64,000 nucleotides of DNA from Octopus bimaculoides (GCF_001194135.2 NC_068985.1:18223014-18287013), one strand, 5' to 3'. Counted from the stretch's first letter, positions 29,305 to 63,271 are shown. Program-made: numbers and translations. The notes: generated by a model from the sequence alone, not told the origin.

Positions 29305-30088
29305 TTATAGACTGATTTCAATTGGAGTTGTTTTGGTTTTATTAATTTTAAAATGTTCGACAGTATCAATATCTATGGAATGTCGTCTCATCAAATGTGC
29401 TTTTAGGTTGCCTTTTGTTGTGCTTTTATAGTCACAAACATGACATGCAAATGGTTTTTCATGGGTGTGCAAACGAATATGAACTTTCAAATGGTCTTGT
29501 TTTTTAAATGTCCGTCCACAATAAAGGCATGACCATTTGCGCTCGCTATTATGACAATTATAAATATGCTTTTGAAGACAGTTTTGGATCTTGTATGTCC
29601 GGCCACAATGTTCACACATGAAATGTGCTTCTTCTTTATGAAACTGTTGTATATGCTCAGTAAGGCCACGTTTCCTTATAAATTCTGCATTACAGAACTC
29701 GCATTTGAAGAGGGTGCAGTTAGCTGGCAATGGCACAGCATGCTGAAAATATCGATGAAAAGGTAAATAATCAGGATTTTGAGAACTGAAACCACATTCT
29801 ATACAAGAGTTGCTATTGGCAATATTCTCACCACTGGAGTGACTACCAACTACAACAAATTCTGGAATATCATCTAAGAGAACATTGTGCACATTTCTCA
29901 AATGTGACACAACAATTTCGGCAAATAGGAATGAGGTATGGCAGATTGTACAGATGAATTCCACTTTATCACTGGAGGCAGTGGCACCGATTTGTCCAAT
30001 AACCATCTTTTCCTGAGAATCACATTCTTCAATTTCATAGACCGTTGGAGATGAACTACTCTCTAATTCCACCTCAATAGGATTGCTG
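29305..30088 (-). CDS. C2H2 zinc-finger terminal exon B (6 fingers), proposed distal alternative last exon of the BTB gene
   Basis: Intact ORF with six CxxC…HxxxH(x)H units and a THEKPFAC linker. Acceptor ttttcctctatcatttcAG|cAG at 30089/30086 is phase 2 and in frame with the BTB exon donor. Stop at 29305-29307. Confidence 0.9.
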
Positions 30089-30574
30089 CTGAAATGATAG
30101 AGGAAAACAAAAATTAATCGAGGAAAATAAGTGTTATTCTTCAAAATGGTTAAAACTTCAAAACACAGCTTTGAATAAAAAGTAATTTAAACAAGAGCAC
30201 TCAGAAAGCGCAAACCTCCACCAAGGCAACACCAACATCCTCTCAAAGATTAGCCAGAAATGATTTTTAAAATGAGAATATCTTAAATATACTCGACTGC
30301 TCTCACAAACAAGAATACTAAAAATGAACCTGACCACTCTCAAAAATTAAGTAAAAAAAAAAAGGAAAAATAATGCAAACTCCTTGTCTGGTACCTGATC
30401 TATCCCAATGGTAGTCATGAAATGTGAAGGTGGCAGTAGAAAATTTAGTAACACTTATAAATAGTTTATCCTTATCTAAAACAAGCCAAAGTTAACAAAT
30501 TCACCATTCAAAATAGTTACAGCCTAAAGGGAGATCATTGAGAAAGTCTTGAAAGTTAACATAAGATTATAATC

Positions 30575-30795
30575 ATGTAAAGTAAATAAATATAACAAAT
30601 AACCCAGAATCCTTGTCTGGTACCAGATCAATCCCAAAATCTAAATACTTTGTGCCAGTCACAAGGCCAAACATCCTTGAAAGTTTCATCCAAATCCATC
30701 CAGTGGTCCTTAAGAAATCTTGTCCACTGACAAACAAAGAAACAAACACGACTGAAAACAATACCTCTGACTTCTTTAAGGTGGAGGTAATAACT
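30575..30795 (-). mobile_element. HINE/DINE-1-like element 5' part
   Basis: Minus strand ttattacctccacc…gaggtattgttttcagtcgtgtttg…gatgaaacttt, the same family as 19198. Confidence 0.65.
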
Positions 30796-31538
30796 AATAA
30801 TTATTAAAAAATAAATAATTAAAATAACTAATGATGACTTACAAATTCATTTTAATACATTCCAACAGATTTAAACATGATTATGCTAATCACTGTTGTA
30901 TATCTTCATTGGAGAATAACTTTCAGATGAATGTGAGTTCAAAATACATAAGAGATCTTTGGGACTTATGTTAATGAATTTAGTGCGTTATAATCACACA
31001 TTCATCTAAAAAGAGAAACTGTTCTCAAATAATGAAATACAACAGTGATTAGCATAACATTCAAATCTGCCAGAACATATTAAACATAAATATGGAAGTT
31101 AATGTTCTGATTCTTGCTGTTCACTAGGCACATAATGATATTCCAGTATTTTACCAATGTCATTTCTTAACCTATGTGGACAGCTTGCTTCAAAACAGTA
31201 GAATGGCAAATTAATGGGTGGCATGCTTGCATGAAATCATTGAAGTGTTTGGAAGGACAGCCAAACTAAATCTCTTAAAGTTACTAAATTATGAAGTGAT
31301 AACTCCAAAAAATTTGTTTATTTTGTTGAATTATTTGACCTTTCAAAATATACACACTCTGAAATACAATATCACATCAACATTAATGCTTCTCATAAGC
31401 TGTTTACACCTTTGATATAACATGAGTACTGACAAAAAAAAAACAAGTAAGGTTTAGCAACAGGAAGAGCATCTAACCATAAAAATCTTGCCTCAAAATG
31501 TGAACCAGTTTATGTCATGCTAACATGGACAACATACA

Positions 31539-31680
31539 TTAACCCTTTTGTTACTATATTTTTGTTGAAATATAATATTTTTGTTTCAATTAATTCTGAA
31601 TATATTAAATTTAGTAAAACAACTTGTACTGTAGAACCAGGGGTGGTCTTAGGTATGTTGGTTGCTAGCAAAAGGGTTAA
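31539..31680. mobile_element. piggyBac-like MITE
   Basis: TTAA-ccttttg…caaaagg-TTAA termini (ttaacccttttg / caaaagggttaa). Confidence 0.7.
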
Positions 31681-31789
31681 ACAACACAAAATGAATAAAC
31701 AGAAGATTGACATTAAATATGGGGAATTAATTTGTGATGTTCTCTTTTATTGTTTATTTATTTCTGTGATTAGACAGGGACTTTGAAGA

Positions 31790-32070
31790 GTTTTGTTGAA
31801 CAAATCAACACAAGTAGTTTGTTTGTTTTTGTTTTTAGTGTGATACTTATTCCGTTTGTCTCTTTTGCTGAGCCACTAAGTTACACAGATACAATCACAC
31901 ACACGCACACACACAACGGGTTTCCATCAATCAAATACACTCACAAGACATTGGTTAACCCAGAGCTATGGTAGAAAGCACTTACATAAGGTGCTACACA
32001 GTGGGACTGAACCTGAAACCATGTGGTTGCAAATTAAGTTTCTTAACTACACAGCCATGCCTGCACCTTA
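31790..32070 (-). mobile_element. tRNA-derived SINE, CpG-decayed
   Basis: cacagtgggactgaacctgaaaccatgtggttgc…cacagccatgcctgcacc is the reverse complement of the SINE head. Confidence 0.7.
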
Positions 32071-32789
32071 TTTTGATGCTAAAGAGCAGTGACTGCTATC
32101 AATAATACTAGCAGTAGTAGTGGTTGTACCAGTTGTATAACTTAAGAGCGAGCACATAGGCCTACTGAAATTTTATTCCAACTGATCAACACTAAGGCAA
32201 ACCACCACTTCAAAACAACATTCCTGGGTTATTTTTAAAGTAATTAGAAAAACACCTGCATAAATTAATGACTGTGGAGAAATATACCAGAGATGACTCC
32301 TGAAATATATAAGTAGGAGATAACATAATGCAGAAAGCAAAAAAAAAATGTTTTCTAATTTTAATTTACCCATAGTGAAAGGAAAGAAACTAATAAATTA
32401 TTAACGCTAGTCAAAGCAGGGGAGACAACTTCAAAATTGAATGAACATTTAGCAGACAAGTATGGCGACAACACTAGATATACTTCTGTCATATTAAGCC
32501 TTTTAATAGTGCTTGCCACAACCAAGAATTCTGGGATATAAAGATTTACAGTAAACTCAACATAAACTTGTGTGGCAACTTAAAAATAATGACTGTGAGA
32601 AAATAAAACTAAAACGTGTCTGCTCTTCAAGAGTATTTACCCCTAGATATATTTTGGTGTAATTCTCAGCTGTTTTCTTAGTTAATATCTCAAACAGAAT
32701 TTATTGCATCAACTATAACCTTTCATCATCTGACACAAGATTATGTCCTCCAATTCCCCCTCCCTTCTCAAAAGATTTTTGTCTTGTAG

Positions 32790-33012
32790 GTTACTTGGTA
32801 ACCCTGTGAGTGCAGGTGCCACTTAAAAAGCATCCAATCCACACTGTGAAGTGGTTGGTGCTTGGAAGGGCATCCAGCTGTAAAAACCTTGCCAAAACTG
32901 ACCTCACCTGTGCTTCTGACATGTAAAAAGCACTAAGTCCACTCTGCTGGGTGATTGTCAAACTGCCCCACCCATGCCAGCATGGAAGGTGGTTGTTTGA
33001 TGATGATGATTA
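32790..33012 (+). mobile_element. RTE-LINE 3' UTR fragment with (GAT)n tail
   Basis: ggaagggcatccagctgtaaaaaccttgcc…acccatgccagcatggaa…tgatgatgat; the family recurs more than 10 times between 32 and 59 kb. Confidence 0.75.
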
Positions 33013-33134
33013 ATGAAAGATTTACAGAAAAATTTCATGAAACTAAAGCACTGGGAAACTTTTAGCTATGAGAGGTGAAATGATTTGCAAATGAGTTTTA
33101 AATTTTCTTTGGTCACAGAAGAGATATCTTATTC

Positions 33135-33381
33135 GTCATTCCAACCATTTTTTGCTTATGGAACCCTTTGATTCTTATTTTATGCAACTAAACTTCCATA
33201 ACCATTCATGGATATAAAAAAAATCCTCCTGTATTTTTATAATTAAATATTTTTAGGAATTATCTAAAAAATTTTAATATTTTGTGGGTTGTAGAAGTAT
33301 AAGTAATTTATTGCAAATAGATTTTAACAAAATCTTATATGGACCCTGAAGGACCATGTGAACCCTGGTTGAGAACCACAG
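33135..33381. mobile_element. hAT-like MITE
   Basis: Right end ggttgagaaccacag; the interior is the reverse complement of the element at 59129-59354. Confidence 0.6.
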
Positions 33382-33645
33382 ATCTAGGGGAATAAAAAAG
33401 GAAATAAACCATAAAAGAAAACTTGACCAGTATAAACATAATTTCTCCAATGAAATACTTAATTCAACATTGGAATTTATAAACAACAACAGTAAAACTT
33501 AGGGTCACAATTATAAGGAAACTATTGTGTTCTACAAAATCTCCCAGATTTTTTTGTAATATGTGAGTCAATCTAATTCTGAAATGGCTATATTTCAAAA
33601 TAGCCCCTAGAATTTACTAACTAGGTTGAACCGCTGCTTTTGGTA

Positions 33646-33685
<40 letters not shown>

Positions 33686-34557
33686 NNNNNNNNNNNNNNN
33701 NNNNNNNNNNNNNNNNNNNNNNNNNNNNNNNNNNNNNNNNNNNNNNNNNNNNNNNNNNNNNNNNNNNNNNNNNNNNNNNNNNNNNNNNNNNNNNNNNNNN
33801 NNNNNNNNNNNNNNNNNNNNNNNNNNNNNNNNNNNNNNNNNNNNNNNNNNNNNNNNNNNNNNNNNNNNNNNNNNNNNNNNNNNNNNNNNNNNNNNNNNNN
33901 NNNNNNNNNNNNNNNNNNNNNNNNNNNNNNNNNNNNNNNNNNNNNNNNNNNNNNNGTTACTTCATTTAGGTCATGGTTAGAGTTTGGTATTTTCATCATC
34001 TTGTAGCTTTTACTGGCTTCAGTCATTGGAGTGGGACCATGCTGGGGCACTGCTTTACAGGGTTTTAGTTGAACAAATTGACTCCAATACATACTTTTTC
34101 CTAAGTATGGTTAAAATCCTAAAGGGTCAAAAGACTTGGAAAGCAAAGCTACTGGACAATTACTAGCACCAAATTCATGACAGATAACAGAAATCATCTT
34201 TGATTCTAACCGTTTATTCTTTTATATTACAACCTTTGTAAACAGTTTAGGTAAATTCTTTTAATGTGTAATTAAACAACTTATATGTATTTCATTTCAA
34301 TTTATTTACAACATAATTTCAGTATTGAATACCAGTGAACCAACAGACTTTCAGATATCTTCTGATATTCCATAACTGCCTTGGTTTCAAAATTATGAGT
34401 TTCTTCCCCTTCTTTTTTCACAATCTTAGGGTTTGGCAAATTCAACTTGTTTCCAAATAATGAACATAGTTTATTTTTAATTATCCTAATCATGTTACTA
34501 TTACAGTTATGTATTAAACAGCTAAGTTGATATTTCTACAATCTAAATTTCTATGTG

Positions 34558-35990
34558 ACATCATCATCGTTTAACGTCCGTTTTCCATGCTGGCATGGGT
34601 TGGACGGTTTGACTGGGGTCTGGCAATCCAGGAGGCTGCAACAGGCTCCAATCTGATCTGGCAATGTTAAAACAGCTGGATGCCCTTCCTAACACCAACC
34701 ACACTGAGAATGTAGTGGGTACTTTTTACGTGCCACCAGCACAGGAGCCAGTCTGGGCAAGGGTGATCACGTCCGGATGGTGCTTTTTACGTGCCACCAG
34801 CACAGGAGCCAGTCAGGCGGCGCTAGCATTGGTCACATTCGGATGGTGCTTTTTACATGCAACCGGCATAGGAGCCGGTCAAGGCAAGGGGGCTGGTATC
34901 AACCACATTCAGATGGTGCTTTTTACGTGCCACTGGCACAGGGAGCCAGTCAGGTGGCACTGACATCAGCCACAACTACAATTTCTATTTGATTTTGATT
35001 TACTTGACTTAATTGGTCTCCTCAAGCACAGCATGTCGTCCAACGAACCAAATCCATTCACAAGGTTTTGGTTGGGCCAGAACTATAGTAGAAAGACAAG
35101 AAAGACACTGGCTCAAGGTGACCCAAGACAAGAAAGACTCTGGCCTAAGATGCAGTAGAACTGAACCCAAAACCACAGGATTGCCAAGTAAGCTTCTTAA
35201 CCACACACCCATGCCTGCTCCTTTTTATTCATCATCATCATCATAATCATCATTTAACATCCGTTTTCCATGCTGGCATGGATTTGACAGTTTGACAGGA
35301 GCTGACCTACTGAAGGGCTGTTCAGGCTCCAGTCATCTGTTTTGGCATGGTTTCTATGGTTGGATGCTCTTCCTAATGCCAACCACTAGGTGCTTTTTAT
35401 GTGGGACCAGCACCTATGAGCCCACAAGATTAGGGATGCTCAGCTGGAGAGGGTTGCAGGGGACGAGCCTATATATGCAAGAGCAACCATGCTTTTACTT
35501 AGCTTGATGTCTCTTCTCAAGCAAAGCAAACCACCAGGAGTCTCAGTCCCCTATCATCCCCTCTGTGAGTCCCAACATCTACAGATCCTTTCTTACAACT
35601 TTATCCCACATCTTCCTGGGTCTACCCCTTCCACATGTTCCCTCTACAATTAGAGATCGGCACCTCTTGATGCAACTGTCTTCATTCATATACATCACAT
35701 GTCCAAACCAGTGCAGTCTTCTCTCTTGCACACTACATCTGATGTCTCTTATACCCAGTTTTTCTCTCAAATCACTTACACTCTGTTGTATATGCACACT
35801 GACATTACCCATCCAGTGAAGCATACTGGCTTCATTTCTTTCAAGTCCTTGCATACCCTCAGTAATTACAGCGCATGTCTTACTGCCATGTAGCACAGCT
35901 GTTCATACACAGGCATCGTACAATCTGCCTTTCACTTTGAGAGAGAGGCAATTCATTACTAACAGAGGTAGAAACTCTCTGAACTTCGTC
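34558..35990 (-). mobile_element. Two adjacent RTE LINE 3' fragments (34558-35060; 35240-35990 with ORF remnant)
   Basis: (CAT)n tails at 34558 and 35230. Minus ORF LHGSKTCAV…LERNEASMLHWM…LREKLGIRDIRCSVQERRLHWFGHV…GRGRPRKMW is the RTE C-terminus. Confidence 0.85.
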
Positions 35991-36363
35991 ACTAAGACTT
36001 TTGAGGTTCTCTGCATTTTCACTGAATAGTCAAAAGGCCAAACGAAATTTAAGTACGGTTATAAGGGTTGAGAGAAGTGATGATGGTTTAATAGGAGGAC
36101 ATTATACATAAACCAAAATTTGGAAATTATTACAGGAAAATACTTGATGCAAATTCAAAGGAGATTGTTAGTAATGTGACAACCAAGTTACTTTCAACTA
36201 GTCAAGACAAATAACAAGTGTTGCATGAAATCAGGTGGACAACAAGAACAAAATAACCAAAATAATTTCAATAGAGCTTTGTGTCTTATTTAGGGATCAG
36301 CTCCTTTTTTTATTAGATTAATTTAAAGAATAAAAATGATAACATAAATATACAGAGATAGTT

Positions 36364-36408
<45 letters not shown>

Positions 36409-37539
36409 GATGGATGGATCGATAGATCAATAGTTAGATACAAAATGATACACACATGTCTAAGAAGAGAATTTTCTCCCAGGGCTACCTGTTCAGCAGG
36501 TCTTTGCACACCCAAGTGCACTCAAACATATTCAATATGATTTAACAAGCACGCACACACACACACACACACACACAAACTGACCACAAATTGATATATA
36601 AGATTTAAAATATCAATAAACAGCATATTTATGATAGTGGCAAGGATAAGATGTTGACTGAAATGGTTGAATATTGAACTAAATGCTGAATAGAATTTAG
36701 TTTAATTTATATTCTGATTTAACAAATGTTAACTTTGACACTCCGCTGCCCACTCTACATTCAGTAAAACAAATACTAAGAACCAATGAAACTCCTTTCC
36801 TTACACAAATTGATTTCATGATAAGTAAAAAAAAAAATTAATATAATTAAATTACATTAAAACTTGTTTAAAGGCTGAAACAATGAAATACAGAAGTGGA
36901 AACAAAACAGTTAATGTTTTTTCTTGCATTTCTTAGATAATTTTTTGGTTAGAAATGGAAAAGGTATAGAGCTGTTAGCTTTGCTTAGATATGTGAGAGA
37001 GGTGAGTGACATGTATAGACTGGTGGTGTTATTGTAACCAGTCTGCCTTGTGTGGTTCTGAAGAAAGATAATAGTTTTATACCATCTCCCAAGTCTCCCC
37101 ATGTCCTGATGAAGAGGTTCTAACCCCAAAATATCAAAGAAATACACTTCTATATTTCATTTATTTTCTATTGTTTTAGCCTTTTAACAAGTTTTAATCC
37201 AATTTAATAATTACACAATGCTTCACCCAAACTATTCTATATTAATATAATTATACACTGCAAACAATAAATACCCATGATTAAAACTGATTATAATAAG
37301 TATCCTCATAAATATATTAAAAAGAATTATAATAAAATAGTAAAAAATTTTCAGTTTCTTTCTATCACAATCTAGAAATAAATATATTTATCATATTATG
37401 ATGAATAAAAAAAATTAATAATATCAAACTACACAATTTGCTCTTAGAGCAGATGATATAAGATGAAAATAATGGAACATTACATAAAAGCACAACATAA
37501 TGACATATGGAAGAAAATTGAAATTGATGAGAGTATACC

Positions 37540-39227: not shown

Positions 39228-39928
39228 ATAAATAAAATTATTAGATGCATCATCTTTAAATATACATCTACCCCTAACTTGAGAGCTGAACCTATGGCCT
39301 TTTATTTTTCATCCAGAATTTCAATATAATATAACCTTGTAGAGGAATTAGTTGTTGGGTTGCAAGATAGATGATGCAACAATTAGAATCCCAAAAGACT
39401 GCAGAATGAAGTTTCCTTTATAAATTACAATATTGAAACATAGGTAAACCAATGACATACCACACACTCAGCACCAACCGTAAACAGAATTGGTAAGTCA
39501 GGTACAATGGCTGTCACTAATGAAATAAGTTTAAACAACTCCATATTTGGTAACCAATTATACACAAGGCACACTAATCTATTTTTCTAAGTTAAATTAG
39601 TGCTTTTGGAATATACAAGAACAGAAAGGAGAGCTAATGACAGTATAGGAGAGGAGAGATTGTACTTGTTATCAAGTGTGACCCTTCAAGCAGGGATATT
39701 GTTTGGATGTTGAGATGCAAATAGAACAGAGGAGCTAAGGGTTAGCTCTCCTTTTCTGATGATAGTAACTTTTTAGAGAATATGAATGAAATTAAATGGA
39801 GCTCTGGAAAACAAAAAAAAAAATAAAATGTGAGAAGGCAATCAGTGCTTTTGTTGGTTGTTGTGACTCTCCAAATGTTCTTCAAGAGTAACACTTTCGT
39901 TTGAATTCTCTTGATGAATAAATTACAT

Positions 39929-40589
39929 TTATAATTTTTTTAAGGGAATGTTGCAAATCTTTAAATGTTTTTTAAGATATCGATTGTTATAAAAACATTT
40001 CCTGCAATGTTCACACCTATACGGTCGGTTATCTTCATGCATATTCTGGTGAGCTTCGAAAGTACTTCGGGAATTGAAACCACGCCCACATATCTTACAA
40101 GTCATTTTGTAGTGACCGTCATGAGACATCTGATGCAATCTTATACCCCATCTGGTAAAAAACTCTTTCCCACAGTGATCACAGTTATAAACTTTCCCAT
40201 CGTGAATTTTAAGATGTTCATTCAGAAGACTTTGGCTGAAGAATTTTCGTGGACATCGAGGACATTTGAAAAGTGTTCCTTCATGCTTCCTCTGGTGAGT
40301 CTTCAAGTTCCCTTTAGTTGAAAATGTCTTTTTACATGTGGGGCACTCAAGTAAATTGACAGAGGATGGCAAATTTGGTTGTATCTGAGATGATAAAAGA
40401 TCACAGCCACTAAGCTCTAATGAAAGTACTTCTTCAGTGTTACAGTCACTTTCATCTAATGTATTTATACGTACTTGCCTTGACATTTCAGGGGATGAGG
40501 ATATTTTGTAAGAATAATCAGCAATACTCTGACCATCTTCACCCTTTTGATCCAACAGTGGACTAGATTGCTTGTCATGGACCAGATCA
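39929..40589 (-). CDS. C2H2 zinc-finger terminal exon A (5 fingers, last one C2HC), proposed proximal alternative last exon of the BTB gene
   Basis: Intact ORF: CPTC…HQRKH, CPRC…HLKIH, CDHC…HQMSH, CKIC…HQNMH, CEHC…HLKIC, stop at 39929-39931. In-frame phase-2 acceptors at 40590 (ttctttcattgacAG) or 40689; the true 5' boundary is uncertain. Confidence 0.88.
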
Positions 40590-41262
40590 CTGTCAATGAA
40601 AGAATTTAGCCATGTATTAGGCTTTGAAACTAGACACTGCGGGAAAGGTTTAGAAAACAATAAATCTAGTAAAAAAGAAAGAAAATATCTAAATAAAAGA
40701 TATCAGAAAAAAATAAATACAAATTAGTAGTGGATCTATTCTCGTACTTTTTACAGCCATTTTTTCCTGTTTGTATGGGTTAGGTGAGTCTTTTCCAACA
40801 CAGTGTCTTGCCAAGTGTTACAATGTCATCTTTGTGATAGTCAGCATTTTGAAATCAGCATTCATCACTTCTTCCTATGTCTTGCAAGGTCTTCCTCAGT
40901 TCCTTCCCCTTGGACCATTTGCCACTTCTTTACACAGATGTCATCACTCCATATGAAATTGTATGTCTATATACCAGCAGTCTTCTTTCTTCTATTACTA
41001 CAGCTAACTCCACTTATACCCAATTTTCTCTTGGCTCATTTGTGCTCCATTAATCATGAAGTAATATTACACAATAAGCAAAACAAGCTTAATTCATTTC
41101 TTTCAAGACTCTGCACATCCTCCACTGAACTGTTAATTGTTAATTCTCATTAACCAAGTCTGCTGCCATGCAACATCATACTTTGTACAAAAGACATCAT
41201 AGAATCTCCCCTTCACTCAAAACTAAAGAAGAACAGATTACTTGTATTCAGTGTACTATTAC

Positions 41263-41434
41263 TTCTAAAAGCAATGAAGTTGCCAGTAGAGGTAACAGTT
41301 CTAAAAGCAATGAAGTTGCCAGTAGAGGTAACAGTTCTAAAAGCNNNNNNNNNNCTAAAAGCAATGAAGTTGCCAGTAGAGGTAACAGTTCTAAAAGCAA
41401 TGAAGTTGCCAGTAGAGGTAACAGTTCTAAAAGC
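41263..41434. repeat. 36-bp tandem repeat spanning a 10-N gap
   Basis: Unit ctaaaagcaatgaagttgccagtagaggtaacagtt, about 2 copies on each side of the gap; copy number may be an assembly artefact. Confidence 0.85.
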
Positions 41435-48545: not shown

Positions 48546-49929
48546 GTAATCAAGATGGATGGATTATATTCATTGAAAGCATGCAACATACATGAACAAA
48601 GTGAAACATCAAGTTACTCTCTAGCATCCTAACCTGTTAAAGGTTGAATTTAAAGATTATAACTATGCCATTGTGGATTTCTTTTAAAATTATTTATAAA
48701 ATTTACAAAGAATTAAGCATAAGACAAAACATACAAAACTGAAAAAAAAAGACGATGTGTTTATCAAAAGGCTGTAAAGTAAAAGGGTATAAAAAAAATG
48801 ACTAAAACAATTTAATAAAAGAAAATCAAGAACATCTTTTTTCACAAGTTCAGAAATCTAAAGTATAGCAAAGTTAAAACTAAAAGATAGGACAACTAAA
48901 AAAAAGCTTCACCATCATCATTATCATTAATTGTCTGTTTTCCATGCTGGCATGGGTTGGACGGTTTGACAGGAGCTAGCAAGCCAGAGTGTTGTACCGG
49001 GCTCCAGTTGTCTGTTTTGACATGGTTTCTATGGCTGGATGCCCTTCAATTTACAGAATATACTGGATGCTTTTTATGTGGTGCCAGCATGATCTTAAAA
49101 TAAATAAAATTCAATTACATATGTACTTTCCTTTTTCGAGATTAGTTTTTTAGTATCAGAGAGAATCTGACTGCATTGAAGATAATCAGATAACTAGGCT
49201 TGACTGACAATATTTTGGGATTTTAGATTTGTTGTCTCCTGAAGTTCAATAGAAGTATCGAAATCTCAGTAGACATGGAAAATTGTATGTATGTATAAAT
49301 ATATGCGATGGAAGTCACATGTAGTCCAAAAAAGACGGTTCTGCAATTCCTTGATGAACAACCTGACAAATGATTTGTCAATAGTGATCAAGTGTACGTT
49401 ACCTCACTCACTCCCTCCATCGAATCAACTTTGCCTAAACAGGTTCACAGGGTAACCCACACGTCATGTATCAAAGAGCAGTGTGAGATGAAGAGCTTTG
49501 CAGAAGAACACAATGCACCACCCAGTTCAGAAGCTGAAACCATGATCTTGCAATCAGGAATGCAGCACCCTAACCACATGGCCATGCAATGTCATGTATG
49601 TACACATGAACATACGTATATGTATATGCACACCAACCAGTAAATGACTGTGTGTGTGTGTGTGTGTGTGTGCGTGCATGCATGTGTGCGTGTGTGTGTC
49701 TGTGTGGTCTTCAGAGGTATGGCAAGTGATTTGGTATGAGGCTATGTTGAAACTGAGACACTATCAGCCAAGAAGTCACATAGCCATTCAAAACCCCACA
49801 AAAATTGTTAACTTCACTGAAACATTTATTACTTGGTGCCAAAATTTTCATGGCACACATTGAGACATGGTCATTTGCATAGTTCCATTGAAAATGGTTT
49901 GAGACAAGGCCATGTATGTATGTGGCTAT

Positions 49930-51370
49930 GTATGTATATATATATGGGAGAATATACAAAAAATAACAACAGACGAGGACAGGTGGTGTAAATAACAAAA
50001 GTATATATTAGTATGACGCTCGGGAATACGGAAAGTCTTTGACGTTTCGAGCTACGCTCTTCAACAGAAAGAATACGGAGACAAGGAGAAAAACACGGAG
50101 AAAAAAAATTGAATAGTGTTCAGTCAACGGTCAATCATAATAATGGCCGATCATAACAATGACTGACCGGAAGTTAGAAATTCTTATTTCAGGAGAGCTA
50201 AGAAAGGGGGAGATAACAAACGGTGATCGGGAACGAGGGGCTGTGTGTGGGAGGTAGACTGCTGGTGATCTNNNNNNNNNNNNNNNNNNNNNNNNNNNNN
50301 NNNNNNNNNNNNNNNNNNNNNNNNNNNNNNNNNNNNNNNNNNNNNNNNNNNNNNNNNNNNNNNNNNNNNNNNNNNNNNNNNNNNNNNNNNNNNNNNNNNN
50401 NNNNNNNNNNNNNNNNNNNNNNNNNNNNNNNNNNNNNNNNNNNNNNNNNNNNNNNNNNNNNNNNNNNNNNNNNNNNNNNNNNNNNNNNNNNNNNNNNNNN
50501 NNNNNNNNNNNNNNNNNNNNNNNNNNNNNNNNNNNNNNNNNNNNNNNNNNNNNNNNNNNNNNNNNNNNNNNNNNNNNNNNNNNNNNNNNNNNNNNNNNNN
50601 NNNNNNNNNNNNNNNNNNNNNNNNNNNNNNNNNNNNNNNNNNNNNNNNNNNNNNNNNNNNNNNNNNGTAGAGGTGGGGTATGGGGGAGTGGGTGTAAGGA
50701 ATGGGGGATAGGATGAATAGGGAAGGTGGGATTGGATTGTGTAGGGGTGGGGTTACGAGGGAGGGGTGACGATGAAGGGAGAGGGGGAAGGGATAAGGTG
50801 GGTAGGAGTGAAGAGAAGAGAGAAGGAGAGTAGGAGTAAAGAGAAGTTAGGAGTCGGAGCAAGAGAGGAGAGAGGAGTAGGGTTAGATGAAGAGAGGAGG
50901 AGAGTTGAACTCATGTGGCACAAAGGAACGAAGAGAGAAGATTAATCCCTCTTCACAGCGAAAACGGGAGTCCAGATGGCCCCTGTGCAAGGACAACCCA
51001 AACACAGACAGGTGTTGCAAAGAGTGACCAGTAGAGCGGAAATGGTGCGAGACTGGGGTATCAATGCCAAGTCGGATGTCTCAGAGGAATTCCATGAACC
51101 GGTCAGCCAAGCGGGGAACAAGCAGGGTTGGGAGGTTGGGTTAGGGAAGAAGCTGTGGACCAAGAGGTCTCGGAGGTTGTGGGTTCGTTTGGAGGGGAGG
51201 GGTCGGTTAGGGAAGATGTGTGAAGTGGAGGGGTCGGACTGGAGTCGCCAGAAGGCTCAGAGAATGGTGCGTTGGAGAGGTAGGGTGGTGGGGTGGTAGG
51301 TGAGGGGAAACAGGAGACAGCGGGGCGGATGTGGGGGGGAGAGAGCAGATGCACGGTCCACGGAACATGC
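49930..51370 (-). mobile_element. Penelope-like element 3' portion (RT-EN linker, GIY-YIG C-terminus, pseudo-LTR with hammerhead motif)
   Basis: Minus strand FPLTYHPTTLPLQRTIL*AFWRLQSDPSTSHIFPNRPLPSKRTHNLRDLLVHS then RLADRFMEFL*DIRLGIDTPVSHHFRSTGHS…EEGLIFSLRSFVPHEFN. Hammerhead motif at 50041-50067. Confidence 0.88.
50036..50072 (-). ncRNA. Minimal type I hammerhead ribozyme motif (probably inactive, A6-to-U)
   Basis: TCTTT-CTGTTGA-A-GAGC-gta-GCTC-GAAA-CG-TC-AAAGA: stem I 5 bp, stem II 4 bp, palindromic ACGT stem III. Confidence 0.65.
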
Positions 51371-51679
51371 TCTGGTAAGGGTGGTGTGGACCCACTACTG
51401 GTCCTTCTACCTGAGGTATTACCTGGACACTTCATCACCACTATCTGTCTTTTTGGAGATACCACTATTTCATTCTCACTCTCTCTCCTAAATGTGAGTA
51501 GCTGTGTAGCTCCTCTACTTGAACCTGCTCTACCCCAACCTCTTCTCTCACATCTTAAATCCCCATCTAACATAACAATGCAGCACACACACTCCTCCTC
51601 AATTTTTAATATTCATTAGAGAAAAGCCTCAAGCATAAATCATTCAATATCGGGTTTGAAAGATGAGCTACATGGTGAC

Positions 51680-52975
51680 TTCAATAGTGCCAGTGACCTA
51701 AAAATAGCACCCAGTACACACTGTGAAGTGCTTGGCATTAGGAAGGACATCCAGCCATAGAAATAGTGCCAAAGCAGACACTGGAGCATAATGCAGTCGC
51801 TGGAATCATTGGATCCTGATCAAATTGTCCACCCCATGCCAGCATGGAACATGAACATATGATGATGATGTGTATCCTTGAAGGAATGACCCGACTTCCT
51901 TTTAGTTAAAAAATGATGAACTGCTAGATCGGGCCTGTAGTCTTATTACAGGAGTCAATCAAATCATTTTACAGAAAGACTAAATTTGTATTCTCATGCA
52001 AAATTATGTCATATTTCACCATGAATATTAAAATTCCACAGAAGAAGAAAAAAGATGTGCAAATAAACTTTTTATAATTTATAATTTTTAAGAAAAACGA
52101 ATATTTAATTATATTTAGCTTTGTTTTCTAATCATGAAATAACAGGCTTTTAATGTCTTAAATTGATGAAAACTGCAGTAAGTGTACATTATTAACATTT
52201 CATTGCTTACTGATGTCTTCCCTTACATATGAGGTTCTGTGCCTATGTAAAAACAAAAAAAAAAATTCATGTTTTTAAAAAAAGACACTCATCACCAAGG
52301 CTAGCAGCATGTAAATTTAACTTATTTTGGATTAAGTTACAGATAGGTGCAGGGATGATTGTGAGTTAAATAAGTTTTGCTTACCAACCATGTGATCTTG
52401 CACAGCACTTTGTGCAAGTGTTTTCTACTATAGCCTTAGGCCAACCAAAGCCTTGTGAGTGGATTTGGTACACAGAAACTGAAAGAAGCTTGTCGTATAA
52501 GTGTGTAAGGAGGGTATGTGTAAACTATCCTGTCATCATGTGATGGTCGTAAATAAGCAGCAAGGTCACATGGTTGATGCCAGTGCCTCCTGATTGGCTC
52601 CCATGCCAGTGGCACATAAAAAGTAGCCACTACTCTCAGAGTGATTGGCATTAGGAAGGGCATCCAGCCGCAGAAACCTTGCCAGATCAGATTGGTGCTT
52701 GGTGCAGCCTACTGGTCTGCCAGTCCGCAGTCAAACCGTCCAACCCATGCCAGCAAGGAAAACAGACGTTAAACGATGATGATGATGATGATGTTGCTCG
52801 TTTCCAGTCTTCCATGAAAAACATGTCTGGCCCTGGGGAAATATCATTTTAATTGGAAACAGGTATGTGTTGATGAGGGGAAGGGCATCTGCCTGTAGAA
52901 GATCAGCTTCAACAAATTCCATTCCACCCATGCAAGCATAGAAAAGAGGACGTTAAATATTGGTGATGATGAAAT
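51680..52975 (+). mobile_element. Cluster of RTE 3' tails (51680-51870, 52540-52790, 52800-52975) around a minus-strand SINE head (~52330-52500)
   Basis: Repeated attaggaagggcatccagc…acccatgccagc…tgatgatgat motifs. Confidence 0.7.
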
Positions 52976-53585
52976 TAAAATGCTACTTTTCAATACTTGA
53001 ATTGGAACAGTTCTATTCTGTAAAGCATGAACAACAAACTGGAACTCTAACAAATAGAATAAAAGATGGACATCAACTCTCTTTCATATCCATAATTTCC
53101 CACGAATAACAACAATAATACATGGTTAATTGCAAGTGCAGAAATTTTTTTCCTAAGCTAATATAATTCTATATTTAAAATGATTAATTTTGATTGCACA
53201 TACTATAAAGAGGCCAATTAGTCACATTTCTGAAACACAAAAATCAAGCTACAAAATGTTATCATGTTAAAAGAGTTTTGTAAAAGATATAAGTTAATGA
53301 TGATACAGCCAGAGACCAATGGCTAAAGTAGAGCAAATTGATCACTATTGAGTGCACAACATCAAATACTGTATTTGATGGCATAAAAGATGCCTGAGCA
53401 TGTTAGACACATCCCCAATTTCAGCAGCATATATTCAAGAAAAGAAGTTTTTAGTGCTTAAAGCATGTAAATATTTAAAGCAATCTAGCAGTACATTGCA
53501 AAACATTACAAAAGCACTTCAGTTATAATAGCAATAGAAATAATAATAAAAATGTCATGTTTAACTAAATATTATTAATATAGAG

Positions 53586-53940
53586 TCAAGTGTGGCTGTG
53601 TGGTAAAAAGCTTGCTTCCCAACCACATGGTTCTGGATGCAGTCCCACTGTGTGGCACCTTGGGCAAGTGTCTTCCACTATAACCTTGGGCCGACCAAAG
53701 CCTTGTGAGTGGATGTGGTAGACAGAAGCTCTGTCTTTTGTCACCCATCACAGCTTGACAATCAGCACTGGTATGCTCACATCCCCATAGCTTATTAGTT
53801 CTGCAAAAGAGACTAATAGAATAAGTACAAGGCTTTAAAGAAAAAAAATAAATACTGTGATCAATTCATACAACTAAAATTTCTTCAAGGTGGTGCCCCA
53901 GTATGGCCACTGTCTAATGACTGAAACAAGTAAAAGATAG
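53586..53940 (+). mobile_element. Near full-length tRNA-derived SINE
   Basis: Head gtggctgtgtggtaaaaagcttgcttcccaaccacatggttc through tail aaggtggtgccccagtatggcc…atgactgaaacaagtaaaaga. Confidence 0.85.
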
Positions 53941-54689
53941 ATTAGGTAGAAGAGACTGTCTTGATTAAAATAAGTCCATAATAGTAGTTAGCATCAGAGA
54001 CAAAACTAGCTTATGGGAAGACTAGCTTTGCATACAGGACCCAGGGTGGATTTTTTTGAAACCTTTCGTTTTTAGACAAGTGCATTTTGCATGTCATCAA
54101 TTATGGTGCATTATGAACTACACCTTATGAAAAGGAAAAAGGATGTCGACAGAGAGTGACAGGAAACGGTTTCCAAACAAACGTTTTTTTTTTATTAAAT
54201 GTTTACCAAAACAAATAAATTTTCATCTTTCAAACTCAATCAGAATGATTTATTCTTGAATGAATATTAAAAATAGAGAGGCATCATTTTCAACATGGCA
54301 TCAACAAACTATCAGAATTTTAATTATTTTATTCTTAGAGACAGTTGCACTTTTTTCTATTTCCTTATCTCCTTTCATTGCCATATTTCTGTTGAAATTC
54401 ACCGACTTTGTTTCAATTAATTTTGAAAATAATGACAAATTTAGTAAAGTAACTGTCATTATGAAGTTGGCATTTGGAACATAAATTAACATAAAATTTT
54501 CATGGAAGACCTTAATGCAGATCACTTTAAAATAGGAAATGTGTACCATAAAACTAAGGGCAGCCTCAGGCAGATTGATATCAAAAAGGTTAAAGAGTAC
54601 TTATGATTTACAATGACAGCAGCTTCTGAAATTATAATGCTGAAAACAATTCATTTAAACTAATCATTTCTTAGAAAACGTGTACTTAC

Positions 54690-55486
54690 CTATGATGCAA
54701 TTTTGAGTCAACTTTATGATTGGTTTCTTTTAATTTTAATAAATGAGAATCAGATGAGGGAGAAGAATGATTGTTATTTTGTGAAAATGAGTATGTTTCT
54801 GATATTTCTTGTACTACAAAGTTTTCAGAAGTTGAAGAATTCTGGGGTGCTATATTTGGTTTGATTTCATCATCAATTATATTATACTGTATTTGGACGG
54901 CTTCATTTGAAGCTTCAGAAACATTCTTAGATGAAGAACTTTCTCCAGCCTGAGAAGAGGAAAGTGAGTTGCCCTTGAAATTTAAATTTTCAACATAAAA
55001 GCTTTTATCTTTCCGTTCAGAAATAACAATGCTTGTTTCTGATGAGGACAAACTGACAGGTTTATGGATGATTTTAGTTTTAATATTGGTACTTTCAGGT
55101 TGGTAAACCCAATTACTATTTTTATTAGTGATTGATTCTGATGATTTGGATAATGATTCATTAAGTACTTTATACAAACAAGTGTCATATGGAGAGGAGA
55201 GAGCAGCTTTAAGTACAACATTTTGTTCCTTTGCAGAGTCCAAGAAAGAGAGACAAAATTTTACTACAGTTTCTACTTGAAGATAAGATGCTATATTAAG
55301 CACCTCCATTACACTCTCTTCATTTAAATTTAGGAGTCCTTCATAAAGATACATTATAAAACAGTGAAGAGCATCCACACCACGGAGATTAATTGGTAAT
55401 TGAACTTGAAGATGTCCTTCACAAGGTCCATTCTGACACAACGCCAACAACGTTGGACTAGCCACCATTAGCACTGTCTTGTGAAC
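54690..55486 (-). CDS. Common exon 2 of the BTB-ZF gene: C-terminal part of the BTB/POZ domain plus Ser/Asn-rich linker
   Basis: Acceptor ttgttgtAG|GTT (phase 0). Reads VHKTVLMVASPTLL…FIMYLYEGLLNLNEESVMEVLNIASYLQVETVVKFCLSFL (BTB signature). Donor AG|GTAAGT at 54689, phase 2. Confidence 0.93.
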
Positions 55487-55739
55487 CTACAACAAATTGT
55501 TAAATGTCATAAATATACACATTTCATATAAATTTCATGTATGCACACACACGCGCATGCAAGATATTAGCTAAGTATGTAGTCCAACAGATACCATTGC
55601 TTAAATTGCAGAGGACATCAGCTGTAAAACCTCTTTGAAACAACCTAGAAAAAGATGTTAGTAGCCATGGCCAGATCATATTTGGTGCATAGTTCATGTG
55701 GCGGTTGTTCTTGCATTAAAATCTCCAAGAACAAACAGC

Positions 55740-56290
55740 TTATCAGTTGCTGACATGGTAGCAAGGTATGAGTCCTGCAGGGCTTGGGAAAACTTGGGAT
55801 CAAAGGGCCTTAAAGTTAACTTAGCAAAGACCAAAGTTCTAGGAAAATGGGCAGAAGAAATTCCATATTGTGTACCCAGTGTAAACTATGGACACATAAG
55901 AGGTACAGTGGAATCACCGAAATATTAATAGAGAAAGTAGACTTTGTTTGTGGCAGGTGCAAAGAAGCAATACACACTAAGAAGACACAGAAAATAGATT
56001 TTCTCAAATAGCCAGGAGGTTTCCCAAAGGTTGTAGATAGTTTCTGTTACCTAGGTGACTTAATTAGTAGTGGAGGAGAACGTTCTAAAAGTATAGTTGC
56101 TAGAATAAGAACCAGCTAGAGAAAGATAAGAGAACTATTGATTTACTGGCAATAGAAGGCCTATTTCTCAGATTGTATGTTTGTTATGAATGCAGAGGAT
56201 ATGTGAAGAATAGAAAGAAATGAAGCTAACATGCTATGCTGGATGTACAACATCAATATGCATGTACAACAAAATGCAAATGAAAGTAAT
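55740..56290 (+). mobile_element. RTE LINE RT remnant in the BTB intron
   Basis: LGSKGLKVNLAKTKVL, KVDFVCGRC, VVDSFCYLGDLISSGG and SIVARIRTS. Confidence 0.8.
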
Positions 56291-56307
56291 GGAAATAACA
56301 GAGAATG

Positions 56308-56372
<65 letters not shown>

Positions 56373-57740
56373 TAATTGATGTATGTCAACAATGAATGAT
56401 ACAAGAATAATGAGAGAGAGAGAGAGAAAGAAAGAGTGATGATTGGTAATAAAGGCAGGTGATGGTAATAGAGAGAGAGAGAGAGAAAGAGTGATGGCTA
56501 TTGTCAATGATATCAATGAGTAATGCAGAAGAAAGTGATTAAAGACAGTAAGAATGACAACTAGCAATAAGTATGGTGATGGAGGGGGATTGAATAATGA
56601 TTGATCTGATGTCATGCCTGCTGCATAGGTGGTGTGATGAGACAGAATAATGTGGAGGCAGAGATGTAGATAGTTCCAAATCCCAATTTCTATCAACACT
56701 ACCACCAGCTTCCATGGCTAGACAAGTCTTCTCCAATAACATCAGTTTTCTGTTTAAAAAAAAACTGTTATTCTTTTCCTCACTCTACTTGAGTTTTATA
56801 TCAATTTATGACTCTTTACAAAGCCCTCAGAGAACATTTGTGAGCATTATCTACAGTCTACAAACATGTGACCTTCAAAATAACTCTGAACATTTCTGGA
56901 CTGGCTTTTTTTTTTTGTACAACACATATCTTTCACAATATATATTGTTCACCCTTTTAAACCAATTTTTCTCAGCGCTTTTCATACTCTATATTGCATG
57001 TAACACATAACCCTTTCCCCATCACTCCTTTAAGTACAAGACCCACTTTTTCCATTCACTATGTCACCATCCTCATCACTCAACCCCTCTGCCTCACCTC
57101 ATCACCTCTGTGTAGGTGGCTACATTAGATTCCTTGTGCCCAGCTTACTCTACTTTCATCCTCACTTCCTGTATTGCCTGTCTTCACCCTATGTACCAGC
57201 ATACGCATATTCCTTTCCTTCTGAGTCTCTGAGATCCCTCTGTCATTGCTTTATCCACTGAATTACCTCCCCCTTGCCATATCACTTTAAATATTCATAT
57301 CTAACTCAGAGTATTGAGTACTTCTCTCACTCGTTTTGGCATGATTTCTATGGTTGGATGCTCTTCCTAATGCCAACCACTTTACAGAGTGTACAGGGTG
57401 GTTCCTACATAGGGCAGTACTAGTGAGGTCACTAGTACCAGTGTCATGTAAATTGCAAGACAAAACCTCTCAACTGAGTGGGGAGCAGTGTTGAGGAAGG
57501 TAGCTTCATTTTAGGCAATGAGAGGCTAAAGTATGCTTGGATAAGAACAGGTGTCTTGCTGTAGGGGAGACACATGGTTACCCTAGTTGGAAAAGAAAAT
57601 GGTGGTGAAGATGTGTACACCCTCAAGTTACAGGAAGGTGGATCACAAGGTATTTAGTCCATTACTACACCATTCAAGTCACTTGATTATTGCACCTCAT
57701 TCAACTTCAAAAAGCAACAGCTTTGTTTGGACAAAGAACT

Positions 57741-57968
57741 TTAACTCTTTAGTGTTTAAACCAGCCAAATCCAGCCAGAATATTCTACCTGTTTTATGTT
57801 CAAAGGTCCGAGATCTGGCCTCTCACACTTACCCTACAATATCATTATCAAAATAAGCAATCACATCATTGAAATCTTGAATCTACAAGATAATACATTA
57901 CTAATTCAAAATAATATGAATAAATAAGCAATACATTTGACAGAGTAATCTGAATGCTAAAACGTTAA
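57741..57968. mobile_element. piggyBac-like MITE 25 bp from the exon-1 donor
   Basis: ttaactctttagtgttt … gaatgctaaaacgttaa termini with TTAA at both ends. Confidence 0.65.
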
Positions 57969-57992
57969 CAAGGAATTGTAGAGAATTCTTAC

Positions 57993-58118
57993 TTTAATCT
58001 TATATGATCCAGCTTGAACAGTAGCATCACAGAGAGTTTGTTTTTTCCATAATTCACAAAGGACAGTCATTGCTTGAGAGCCATGGTCTTGATCCAGGTA
58101 AGCTTGTTCATATACCAT
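57993..58118 (-). CDS. Common coding exon 1 of the BTB-ZF gene (exon spans 58176-57993; CDS from ATG 58118)
   Basis: Acceptor ttatatttgcAG at 58177, in-frame upstream TAA, AAAATGG start. Reads MVYEQAYLDQDHGSQAMTVLCELWKKQTLCDATVQAGSYKIK with donor AAA|GTAAGA, phase 0. Joins exon 2 to give the canonical LCD…K-VHKTVL BTB N-terminus. Not in the ORF track because it is under 60 aa. Confidence 0.9.
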
Positions 58119-58409
58119 TTTGCAGGTATATTACAACAGTAGGGGGAATTCAGAAACATAGGAATTCAAGGTATACCTGCAAATATAATAGAAATATAAA
58201 AACTGATGACAGTTGCACTAAAAACATTTTCCCTGGATATATGGGCTGAAATTTGGGATGTGTCTATTATGTTCGAGTATCTTTTTTAAGTCATTAAACA
58301 TAGTACGTATTTTGATTAAATTTCTTGAAATATTCCTTATTAGAAAGCAGCAATAACACAAAAGAATTAAAGAATTATTGTTTTAAGTCAAGAAAACTTT
58401 TATTAATTC

Positions 58410-62946: not shown

Positions 62947-62982
<36 letters not shown>

Positions 62983-63240: not shown

Positions 63241-63271
<31 letters not shown>

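What the first reader, a model, noticed from the sequence alone, without database searches (positions are those of the whole stretch)
29305..58176. One BTB head, two interchangeable zinc-finger tails: a lola/broad-like isoform switch in a probable octopus
Seen: exons 58118-57993 (phase 0) and 55486-54690 build a complete BTB domain and end at a perfect phase-2 donor. Two intact C2H2 cassettes lie about 14.1 kb and 24.6 kb downstream on the same strand. Each has a phase-2 acceptor and its own stop, so they cannot be chained into one protein. Predicted products are 527 aa (5 fingers, acceptor 40590) and 568 aa (6 fingers). Known: Drosophila lola, broad, fruitless and mod(mdg4) join constant BTB exons to mutually exclusive 3' DNA-binding exons, partly by trans-splicing for lola and mod(mdg4). 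Coleoid cephalopods have greatly expanded C2H2 repertoires. Inference: this locus generates alternative DNA-binding specificities on a shared dimerisation domain, possibly convergently. I am not aware of this layout being described in molluscs but cannot check. Caveat: a phase match occurs by chance about one time in three, and exon A has several candidate acceptors.
Basis: partly seen in the sequence, partly recalled or inferred. Interest (0 to 1): 0.85.

Follow-up and report, generated by a model that had tools for sequence, protein, structure and literature searches.

The report
Octopus BTB gene with two zinc-finger tails
An Octopus bimaculoides transcription-factor gene has one BTB "head" and two different zinc-finger "tails"; the far tail is the known main product, and the near tail is conserved as protein but has no transcript evidence, so this is a tidy, modestly new case of a trick best known from insects.

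Summary
On the minus strand, exons 58118-57993 and 55486-54690 encode a BTB domain and end at AG|GTAAGT in phase 2. The only two C2H2 arrays in the window lie downstream (A: acceptor 40589, 5 fingers; B: acceptor 30088, 6 fingers). The three assembly gaps are intronic, and the locus is colinear with a gapless O. vulgaris locus.

Both predicted products are already in databases. Head+B (568 aa) is RefSeq XP_014773873.1 of O. bimaculoides. Head+A (527 aa) is UniProt A0A0L8HAT2 from the older annotation. They are not listed as isoforms of one gene.

Head+B is also annotated in O. vulgaris, O. sinensis and Argonauta. It is a contiguous ORF on short contigs from eight sequencing runs of a more distant relative.

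Tail A has no direct transcript evidence. Its acceptor is used in O. sinensis isoform X3 and Argonauta isoform X1. Its fingers show strong purifying selection (14 synonymous vs 3 non-synonymous changes, omega 0.04, P=2e-8). Three fingers persist in frame in Argonauta, inside an annotated intron.

Exon A is a composite exon, not a strictly exclusive one. Its 5' part can be spliced on to B, in frame in Argonauta and out of frame in Octopus (a 350-aa BTB-only product).

The BTB is ZBTB/BCL6-like, not the arthropod TTK type, so the resemblance to lola is analogy. Nothing suggests trans-splicing.

The parts
57993..58118 (-). Coding exon 1: ATG plus the first 42 codons (N-terminal part of the BTB domain); donor AAA|GTAAGA.
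   Evidence: Identical N-terminus in the RefSeq proteins. One of only four blocks alignable to Argonauta.
54690..55486 (-). Coding exon 2: rest of the BTB domain plus a serine-rich linker, 797 nt. It ends TAG|GTAAGT with two bases carried over.
   Evidence: PF00651, residues 22-126. dN/dS 0.11 against O. vulgaris.
40590..40713 (-). Intronic block just upstream of the exon A acceptor. It is conserved from Octopus to Argonauta and includes the weak polypyrimidine tract (12 of 20 pyrimidines).
   Evidence: the alignable block runs 40713-40138..
40475..40589 (-). Exon A, 5' part (A'): 115 nt from acceptor gacAG|TGATCT to the internal donor CAA|GTACGT (GT at 40474-40473). Spliced on to B, it shifts the frame and gives a 350-aa BTB-only product ending QQSY.
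   Evidence: O. sinensis isoform X3, XP_036359106.1. The same product was rebuilt from the window.
39929..40589 (-). Exon A read through as a terminal exon: linker plus five C2H2 fingers (39953-40345) and stop TAA at 39931-39929. This gives the 527-aa BTB-ZnF-A protein.
   Evidence: Exact match to UniProt A0A0L8HAT2. Fingers: 14 synonymous vs 3 non-synonymous changes against O. vulgaris, omega 0.043, P=2e-8. Fingers 1-3 are 74% identical in Argonauta.
29305..30088 (-). Exon B: terminal exon with six C2H2 fingers (29380-29952) and stop at 29307-29305. It has a strong acceptor (17 of 20 pyrimidines) and a NAGNAG alternative at 30085. This gives the 568- and 567-aa BTB-ZnF-B proteins.
   Evidence: Exact match to XP_014773873.1 and XP_014773874.1. 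Orthologues in O. vulgaris, O. sinensis and Argonauta, and in short contigs from eight runs of a distant cephalopod. Omega 0.043.
30074..30088 (-). The first 15 nt of exon B read in the shifted frame (CAG CAA TCC TAT TGA = QQSY*). This frame is used when A' is spliced to B.
33686..33955 (.). Assembly gap in the A-B intron. The flanks are contiguous in O. vulgaris, about 26 bp apart.
41345..41354 (.). Assembly gap in the exon 2-A intron, about 750 bp upstream of the A acceptor. The flanks are colinear in O. vulgaris.
50272..50666 (.). Assembly gap in the exon 2-A intron, inside a roughly 1.7-kb stretch that O. vulgaris lacks.

Best explanation
This is a single ZBTB-type transcription-factor gene of Octopus bimaculoides, named 'zinc finger protein 26' in RefSeq. 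Its pre-mRNA ends in one of two ways.

The default, conserved route skips exon A. It joins exon 2 (54690) to the strong acceptor of exon B (30088 or 30085) and gives BTB plus six fingers.

The second route uses the weak acceptor at 40589. If the transcript is then not spliced again, and is presumably cleaved and polyadenylated downstream of 39929, translation runs straight into five different fingers and stops. That gives BTB plus finger set A, with a different DNA specificity on the same dimerisation domain.

A third outcome uses an internal donor inside exon A and joins its 5' part to B. In Octopus this shifts the frame and yields a 350-aa BTB-only protein. In Argonauta a different donor, at the linker/finger boundary, keeps the frame and simply lengthens the linker in front of tail B.

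Shown here:
- the exon anatomy;
- the head-to-B junction;
- use of the A acceptor and of internal donors in related species' annotations;
- protein-level purifying selection on the A fingers.

Inferred:
- that a head+A mRNA is actually made and polyadenylated after A;
- that the two proteins bind different sites;
- that the choice is regulated.
For: Anatomy and frames.

Head+B:
- The exact 568- and 567-aa proteins are in RefSeq.
- The O. vulgaris and O. sinensis orthologues are 99% identical. Argonauta has a 643-aa orthologue.
- A contiguous 584-aa head+B ORF sits on 2-3 kb Logan contigs from eight different runs. That fits spliced transcripts, although the type of library could not be checked.

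The A acceptor is really used: O. sinensis X3 is head + the first 39 codons of A + QQSY. Argonauta X1 is head + a 234-nt A' exon + B.

The A fingers are coding:
- Against O. vulgaris, the finger part of A shows 17 differences in 420 nt, 14 of them synonymous. Omega is 0.043, the same as tail B. The binomial P is 2e-8.
- All five fingers are intact in O. vulgaris.
- In Argonauta, reading through the annotated donor gives three fingers at 74% identity, against 43% for the annotated linker. pS is 0.74 (saturated) and pN is 0.16.
- Exon A is one of only four colinear blocks alignable between Octopus and Argonauta.

A head+A 527-aa model exists (A0A0L8HAT2).

Splice-site strengths fit a minor and a major choice: the A acceptor has 12 of 20 pyrimidines and B has 17 of 20.

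The locus is colinear in a gapless relative and has no third cassette.
Against: - No transcript or read evidence for a complete head+A mRNA could be obtained here.
- The RefSeq models for O. bimaculoides and O. sinensis, and the O. vulgaris and Argonauta annotations, contain no head+A protein. The constructed O. vulgaris (529 aa) and Argonauta (480 aa) head+A sequences are not in the 15-billion-protein collection.
- No conserved canonical poly(A) signal lies close to the A stop. The first AATAAA is 625 nt downstream in O. bimaculoides, and the O. vulgaris one is not at the aligned position.
- Argonauta has lost fingers 4-5, so the tail is not uniformly conserved.
- Purifying selection shows that the fingers are translated. 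It does not show which 5' exons they are joined to.
Confidence: 0.68

Rival explanations
1. Tail A is translated, but from its own transcripts. These would start in the exon 2-A intron, for example from the in-frame Met at 'MSRQ', and give a 185-aa finger-only protein. That would make it a nested gene, not an isoform of the BTB gene. The BTB gene's only finger-bearing product would then be head+B.
For: - No annotated head+A protein outside the 2015 model.
- The intron sequence for about 700 nt upstream of A is better conserved between the two Octopus species (89-97%) than typical intron. That could mark a promoter as well as splicing control.
- There is an in-frame ATG 39 codons into exon A.
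Against: - The A acceptor is demonstrably joined to the BTB exons in O. sinensis X3 and Argonauta X1.
- Once that acceptor is used and the internal donor is not, the frame runs into the fingers automatically.
- The linker upstream of the Met is also open and conserved in frame in Argonauta.
- The 185- and 187-aa Met-start products are not in the protein collection either.
Confidence: 0.15
2. Exon A serves the gene only through its 5' part: a linker cassette in Argonauta and a frame-shifting, BTB-only switch in Octopus. On this view the finger ORF is a decaying remnant of a former terminal exon and is no longer expressed.
For: - Annotations in three species use only the 5' part of A.
- Argonauta has lost fingers 4-5 and gained a donor exactly at the linker/finger boundary.
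- There is no conserved poly(A) signal.
Against: - A remnant would accumulate non-synonymous changes and stops. Instead 14 of 17 differences in the fingers are synonymous (P=2e-8), and all zinc ligands are kept in both Octopus species.
- In Argonauta the three remaining fingers are more conserved than the exon annotated as coding, despite saturated synonymous sites.
Confidence: 0.1
3. The tails are joined to the head by trans-splicing of separately transcribed RNAs, as at Drosophila lola and mod(mdg4).
For: None found here. It was raised only by analogy.
Against: All exons lie in order on one strand within 29 kb. They are colinear in three species. They have ordinary cis splice sites. Cis-splicing explains every annotated product.
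Confidence: 0.02

Closest known systems
Drosophila TTK-group BTB-ZF loci with alternative 3' zinc-finger exons (tramtrack p69/p88, broad Z1-Z4, fruitless, lola)
   Same: Constant 5' exons encode an N-terminal BTB domain. Alternative terminal exons each carry their own C2H2 array and stop codon, so one oligomerisation module is paired with different DNA-binding modules (PMC11426971). tramtrack, with two tails, is the closest in scale (from my own knowledge).
   Different: - The BTB here is not TTK-type. It has no FxLRWN motif and its nearest solved BTBs are ZBTB17, BCL6 and KEAP1. TTK-type BTBs are reported to be arthropod-specific and absent from molluscs (PMC11426971).
- There are only two tails, each with 5-6 fingers, not the usual pair.
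- The proximal tail is a composite exon with internal donors.
- There is no sign of trans-splicing.
- The resemblance is therefore convergent.
Vertebrate ZBTB proteins with C-terminal isoforms, e.g. PATZ1/ZBTB19
   Same: A classical dimerising BTB plus C2H2 fingers, with alternatively spliced transcripts that change the finger complement. PATZ1 has four isoforms with 4-7 fingers (PMC11354804).
   Different: PATZ1 isoforms are described as varying only in the number of fingers (4-7). That they keep a shared set of proximal fingers and vary only the distal ones is my own recollection. Here the two finger arrays are wholly different: they are only about 27-30% identical in local alignments, which is ordinary C2H2 background.
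Existing database models of this gene: RefSeq XP_014773873.1/XP_014773874.1 (O. bimaculoides), XP_029636624.1/XP_036359106.1 (O. sinensis LOC115211989), CAI9722840.1 (O. vulgaris), GAB1602846.1 (Argonauta hians), UniProt A0A0L8HAT2 and A0A0L8HBG8
   Same: Head+B, head+A and the A'-B junction are each already present as a predicted protein.
   Different: No single annotation lists head+A and head+B as isoforms of one gene. The 2015 annotation split the locus into head+A and a separate B gene. RefSeq kept only head+B, plus X3 in O. sinensis. No paper describing the layout was found.
Composite terminal exons and alternative last exons set by competition between splicing and intronic polyadenylation (a general mechanism)
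   Same: An exon can act as an internal exon through an internal 5' splice site, or as a terminal exon when that site is bypassed. A weak proximal acceptor faces a strong distal one.
   Different: The poly(A) site after exon A has not been shown.

Membership tests
Arthropod TTK-group BTB-ZF multi-isoform loci (lola/ttk/br/fru type) | TTK-type BTB domain with the N-terminal FxLRWN motif | tested here: not met
   The N-terminus reads MVYEQAYLDQDHGSQAMTVLCELWKKQ, with no FxLRWN. The best PDB matches are ZBTB17/BCL6, KEAP1, BACH1 and ZBTB8A, and no TTK-type chain is among the 60 listed. PMC11426971 reports no TTK motif in Mollusca.
Arthropod TTK-group BTB-ZF multi-isoform loci (lola/ttk/br/fru type) | Constant 5' BTB exons joined to alternative 3' exons, each with its own DNA-binding domain and stop | tested here: inconclusive
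   The layout is present, and head+B is confirmed. Head+A rests on one older gene model, on acceptor use in relatives and on purifying selection. No transcript supports it.
Arthropod TTK-group BTB-ZF multi-isoform loci (lola/ttk/br/fru type) | Large series of variable exons (lola about 20, mod(mdg4) about 30) | tested here: not met
   There are only two intact C2H2 arrays in the 64-kb window, in the 54-kb O. vulgaris locus and in the 33-kb Argonauta locus. Only four blocks are conserved with Argonauta.
Arthropod TTK-group BTB-ZF multi-isoform loci (lola/ttk/br/fru type) | Trans-splicing between separately transcribed RNAs (lola, mod(mdg4)) | not testable with these tools
   This needs allele-phased long reads. 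The colinear, same-strand layout makes it unnecessary.
ZBTB-type (classical dimerising BTB + C2H2) transcription factors | N-terminal BTB/POZ domain above the Pfam threshold | tested here: met
   PF00651, 64.2 bits against a cut-off of 20.5, residues 22-126.
ZBTB-type (classical dimerising BTB + C2H2) transcription factors | C-terminal array of C2H2 zinc fingers | tested here: met
   PF00096 at 88.4 bits (tail A, five stretches) and 52.1 bits (tail B). The motif scan finds 5 and 6 fingers.
ZBTB-type (classical dimerising BTB + C2H2) transcription factors | BTB closest to ZBTB/BCL6-type domains rather than other BTB classes | tested here: inconclusive
   The top hit is a ZBTB17-BCL6 fusion chain (8.7e-15), but KEAP1 and KLHL3 BTBs score similarly (about 4e-11). 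The non-cephalopod protein hits are fish ZBTB34-like proteins at about 30% identity over about 20% of the query.
Composite terminal exon / alternative last exon | The same exon is used both with and without an internal 5' splice site | tested here: inconclusive
   Internal donors are used in O. sinensis X3 (equivalent to 40475|GT) and Argonauta X1 (L001 18115|GT). Unspliced, terminal use is seen only in the A0A0L8HAT2 model.
Composite terminal exon / alternative last exon | A functional cleavage/polyadenylation site downstream of the proximal exon | tested here: inconclusive
   AATAAA occurs at 39306, 39164 and 38948, which is 625 nt or more after the stop. The O. vulgaris AATAAA (L011 30946) aligns to AATAGA in O. 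bimaculoides.

The most novel reading that the evidence does not exclude
Since at least the Octopus-Argonauta ancestor, octopods have kept a non-TTK, ZBTB-type gene that swaps its entire zinc-finger array. It would do so through competition between skipping, internal splicing and termination at a composite exon. Lineages have rewired the middle outcome: an in-frame linker cassette in Argonauta and a frame-shifting BTB-only isoform in Octopus. That would be an independent origin, outside arthropods, of the 'one BTB, several DNA-binding tails' logic that has been treated as a hallmark of arthropod TTK-group factors.
Probability: 0.6. Interest if true: 0.5.

Novelty: new member of a known kind. 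Interest (0 to 1): 0.35.

Why it matters
If head+A is expressed, this is a clear non-arthropod, non-TTK example of one BTB dimerisation module paired with two unrelated finger arrays. Homo- and heterodimers of the two isoforms, and of the BTB-only form, could then read different or composite DNA sites. A recent survey links multi-isoform BTB-ZF genes to the arthropod-specific TTK BTB type (PMC11426971), so a cephalopod case would show that the strategy arose more than once. On the practical side, the locus is annotated inconsistently: as two genes in the 2015 set, and as one gene without tail A in RefSeq. It should be re-annotated. It does not open a long-standing question, because alternative last exons are common and both proteins are already in databases.

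Tried and rejected
1. An exhaustive HMMER search of 1.84 billion representatives with tail A. The top 150 were all long poly-zinc-finger proteins with summed multi-domain scores. No orthologue could be picked out, so this was uninformative.
2. A word-index search with the head alone. It returned only two proteins and missed the 98%-identical full-length orthologues found. Absence of a hit in these searches is therefore weak evidence.
3. An exact-sequence look-up of head+A (527 aa) on contigs. I also looked up the constructed O. vulgaris and Argonauta head+A, Argonauta exon-skip, Met-start A and O. bimaculoides X3-like products. None is on record. The Octopus-species head+B has no transcript-like Logan contig either, because its Logan members are genomic. 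The absence is therefore not specific to tail A.
4. L012 and L013, hoped to be transcripts, are genomic contigs of another Octopus species. They carry intron sequence upstream of the B acceptor.
5. L014 is a distant cephalopod genome contig holding exons 1-2. It ends 5.4 kb after exon 2 and has no A-like sequence in that span. It cannot say whether tail A exists outside octopods.
6. The search for a conserved poly(A) signal after A was inconclusive.
7. A search for an in-frame internal donor in the Octopus exon A, equivalent to the Argonauta one, found only poor GT sites such as TGA|GTGCCC at 40347.
8. The annotated relatives use 40589.
9. Literature searches for a mollusc or cephalopod description of this layout, or of the gene id, found nothing relevant.
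10. Pfam scans of three transposon-like ORFs found no family.

Full report
**Observation.** I read the minus strand at the stated coordinates and spliced the pieces in silico.
- The ATG is at 58118. Exon 1 ends AAA|GTAAGA at 57993 (126 nt).
- Exon 2 starts after ttgtAG at 55486 and ends TAG|GTAAGT at 54690 (797 nt, so two bases carry over).
- Joining to 40589 gives 527 aa. Joining to 30088 gives 568 aa.
- Pfam finds a BTB domain in the head (E=1.5e-17, residues 22-126). It finds C2H2 fingers in both tails.
- A six-frame motif scan finds five fingers at 39953-40345 and six at 29380-29952. It finds no other intact array in the 64 kb.
- At the local base composition, open frames of these lengths have chance probabilities of about 5e-7 and 3e-8.
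- The arithmetic and coordinates of the finding are correct.

**Assembly gaps.** All three gaps in the span are intronic.
- The window is identical, gaps included, to Octopus bimaculoides GCA_001194135.2, chromosome CM046605.1. That assembly therefore gives no independent check.
- The gapless O. vulgaris locus (L011) carries exon 1, exon 2, A and B in the same order and strand. It has no further C2H2 array.
- Both flanks of each gap align colinearly to L011.
- No exon or reading frame depends on a gap.

**What is already known about the gene.** An exact-sequence look-up gives these matches.
- The 568-aa head+B protein is RefSeq XP_014773873.1, 'zinc finger protein 26 isoform X1' of O. bimaculoides.
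- Isoform X2 (567 aa) uses the second AG of a NAGNAG acceptor.
- The 527-aa head+A protein is UniProt A0A0L8HAT2. Tail B alone is A0A0L8HBG8. The older annotation thus split the locus into two genes.
- Head+B orthologues exist in O. vulgaris and O. sinensis (99% identity) and in Argonauta hians.
- A 584-aa head+B protein, 58% identical, is a contiguous ORF on 2-3 kb contigs assembled from eight different sequencing runs. That fits spliced mRNA. The library type and species could not be checked.

**Tail A.** No protein carrying the A fingers was found other than the 2015 model. Two annotated isoforms in relatives nonetheless use the A acceptor.
- O. sinensis isoform X3 (350 aa) is head plus the first 39 codons of exon A, followed by QQSY-stop.
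- That is exactly what the window yields if the internal donor CAA|GTACGT (exon end 40475) is spliced to the B acceptor. A' is 115 nt, so B is read out of frame.
- Argonauta isoform X1 (643 aa) is head plus a 234-nt A' exon plus B, in frame. The donor CAATAC|GTTGGA sits exactly at the linker/finger boundary.
- Reading through that Argonauta donor, inside the annotated intron, gives three C2H2 fingers in frame. They are 74% identical to Octopus fingers 1-3, against 43% for the annotated linker.
- Synonymous sites there are saturated (pS 0.74) while pN is 0.16.
- Across the whole locus, only four colinear blocks can be aligned between Octopus and Argonauta. They are exon 1, exon 2, exon A (with 124 nt of upstream intron) and exon B.
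- Between O. bimaculoides and O. vulgaris, the finger part of A shows 17 differences in 420 nt. Fourteen are synonymous (omega 0.043, equal to tail B; binomial P=2e-8).
- All five fingers are intact in O. vulgaris. The stop there moves by two codons.
- The A fingers are therefore translated in the frame set by the BTB exons and have been kept by selection for a long time.

**Mechanism (inferred).** Exon A is a composite exon with three outcomes.
- Skipping it gives BTB + B. This is the default. The B acceptor has 17 of 20 pyrimidines against 12 of 20 for A.
- Entering at 40589 and terminating downstream of 39929 gives BTB + A.
- Entering and leaving at an internal donor gives a BTB-only protein in Octopus, or a longer linker before B in Argonauta.
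- The termination step is the unproven link. The nearest canonical AATAAA is 625 nt past the stop and is not conserved in position.
- Every other junction comes from an annotation, not from reads I could inspect.
- I found no in-frame internal donor of any quality in the Octopus exon.

**Rivals.**
- A nested, separately transcribed finger gene remains possible (about 0.15). It is less economical, because the acceptor is joined to the BTB exons in two species.
- A decaying remnant is contradicted by the substitution pattern.
- Trans-splicing has nothing in its favour.

**Comparison with known systems.**
- The layout resembles the Drosophila tramtrack/broad/lola type.
- The defining TTK-type BTB (FxLRWN motif) is absent, and the nearest solved BTBs are ZBTB17/BCL6, KEAP1 and BACH1.
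- Bonchuk et al. (PMC11426971) report that TTK BTBs are arthropod-specific and absent from molluscs. They also report that the non-TTK BTB-C2H2 proteins of the fly have one isoform each.
- This is therefore a functional analogue, not a member, and it has two tails, not a series.
- Among classical ZBTB proteins, PATZ1 varies its finger number by splicing (PMC11354804). I am not aware that it exchanges the whole array.
- Literature searches found no description of this layout in molluscs or of this gene.

**Verdict.**
- It is one gene with two finger tails, convergent with the insect cases.
- Both proteins are already in databases, and the near tail still lacks transcript proof.
- The exons are not strictly exclusive, and trans-splicing is not indicated.
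- Interest is modest: a neat annotation correction and a plausible independent origin of a known strategy.

Noticed in passing
window 30085-30091 (- strand): The exon B acceptor is a NAGNAG (tttcAG|CAG|CAA). The two RefSeq isoforms of O. bimaculoides (568 and 567 aa) differ by exactly this one serine.
   Followed up: yes
window 40590-40713 and 40600-41310 (- strand); L001 17756-17881: The intron just upstream of the exon A acceptor is unusually conserved. It can be aligned even to Argonauta for 124 nt, and it is 89-97% identical to O. vulgaris for about 700 nt. It could be a splicing-control element or an internal promoter.
   Followed up: partly
L001 (Argonauta hians) 18380-18400: The three-finger read-through ORF in Argonauta ends just after a strong donor-like AAAATG|GTATGT. 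The tail may continue into a further, unidentified exon instead of stopping at the TGA.
   Followed up: no
L011 (O. vulgaris) 30471-30479: The tail A stop codon TAA of O. bimaculoides is CAA in O. vulgaris. The ORF there runs two codons further (…KKLQM*).
   Followed up: yes
window 39953-40345 vs 29380-29952 and 54692-55486: Synonymous divergence from O. vulgaris is about 0.21 in the A fingers but only about 0.075 in exon 2 and tail B. The counts are small (14 vs 11-12 changes). It may be noise, or extra constraint on synonymous sites in the constitutive exons.
   Followed up: no
window 48977-50735: About 1.7 kb, including the 395-N gap, has no counterpart in O. vulgaris, which has about 170 bp between the same flanks. 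It is probably a lineage-specific repeat insertion or a mis-sized gap.
   Followed up: partly
window 35579-35896 (-), 569-940 (-), 16571-16915 (+): These short ORFs look, from memory, like fragments of non-LTR reverse transcriptases and of a mariner-type transposase. Pfam gave no hit for any of them, so the resemblance is unconfirmed.
   Followed up: partly
window 56300-56500, 33640-33685, 8230-8320, 62900-63900: Long CT, CA/GT and TA-rich microsatellites are present. Several directly abut assembly gaps, which probably explains why the gaps are there.
   Followed up: no
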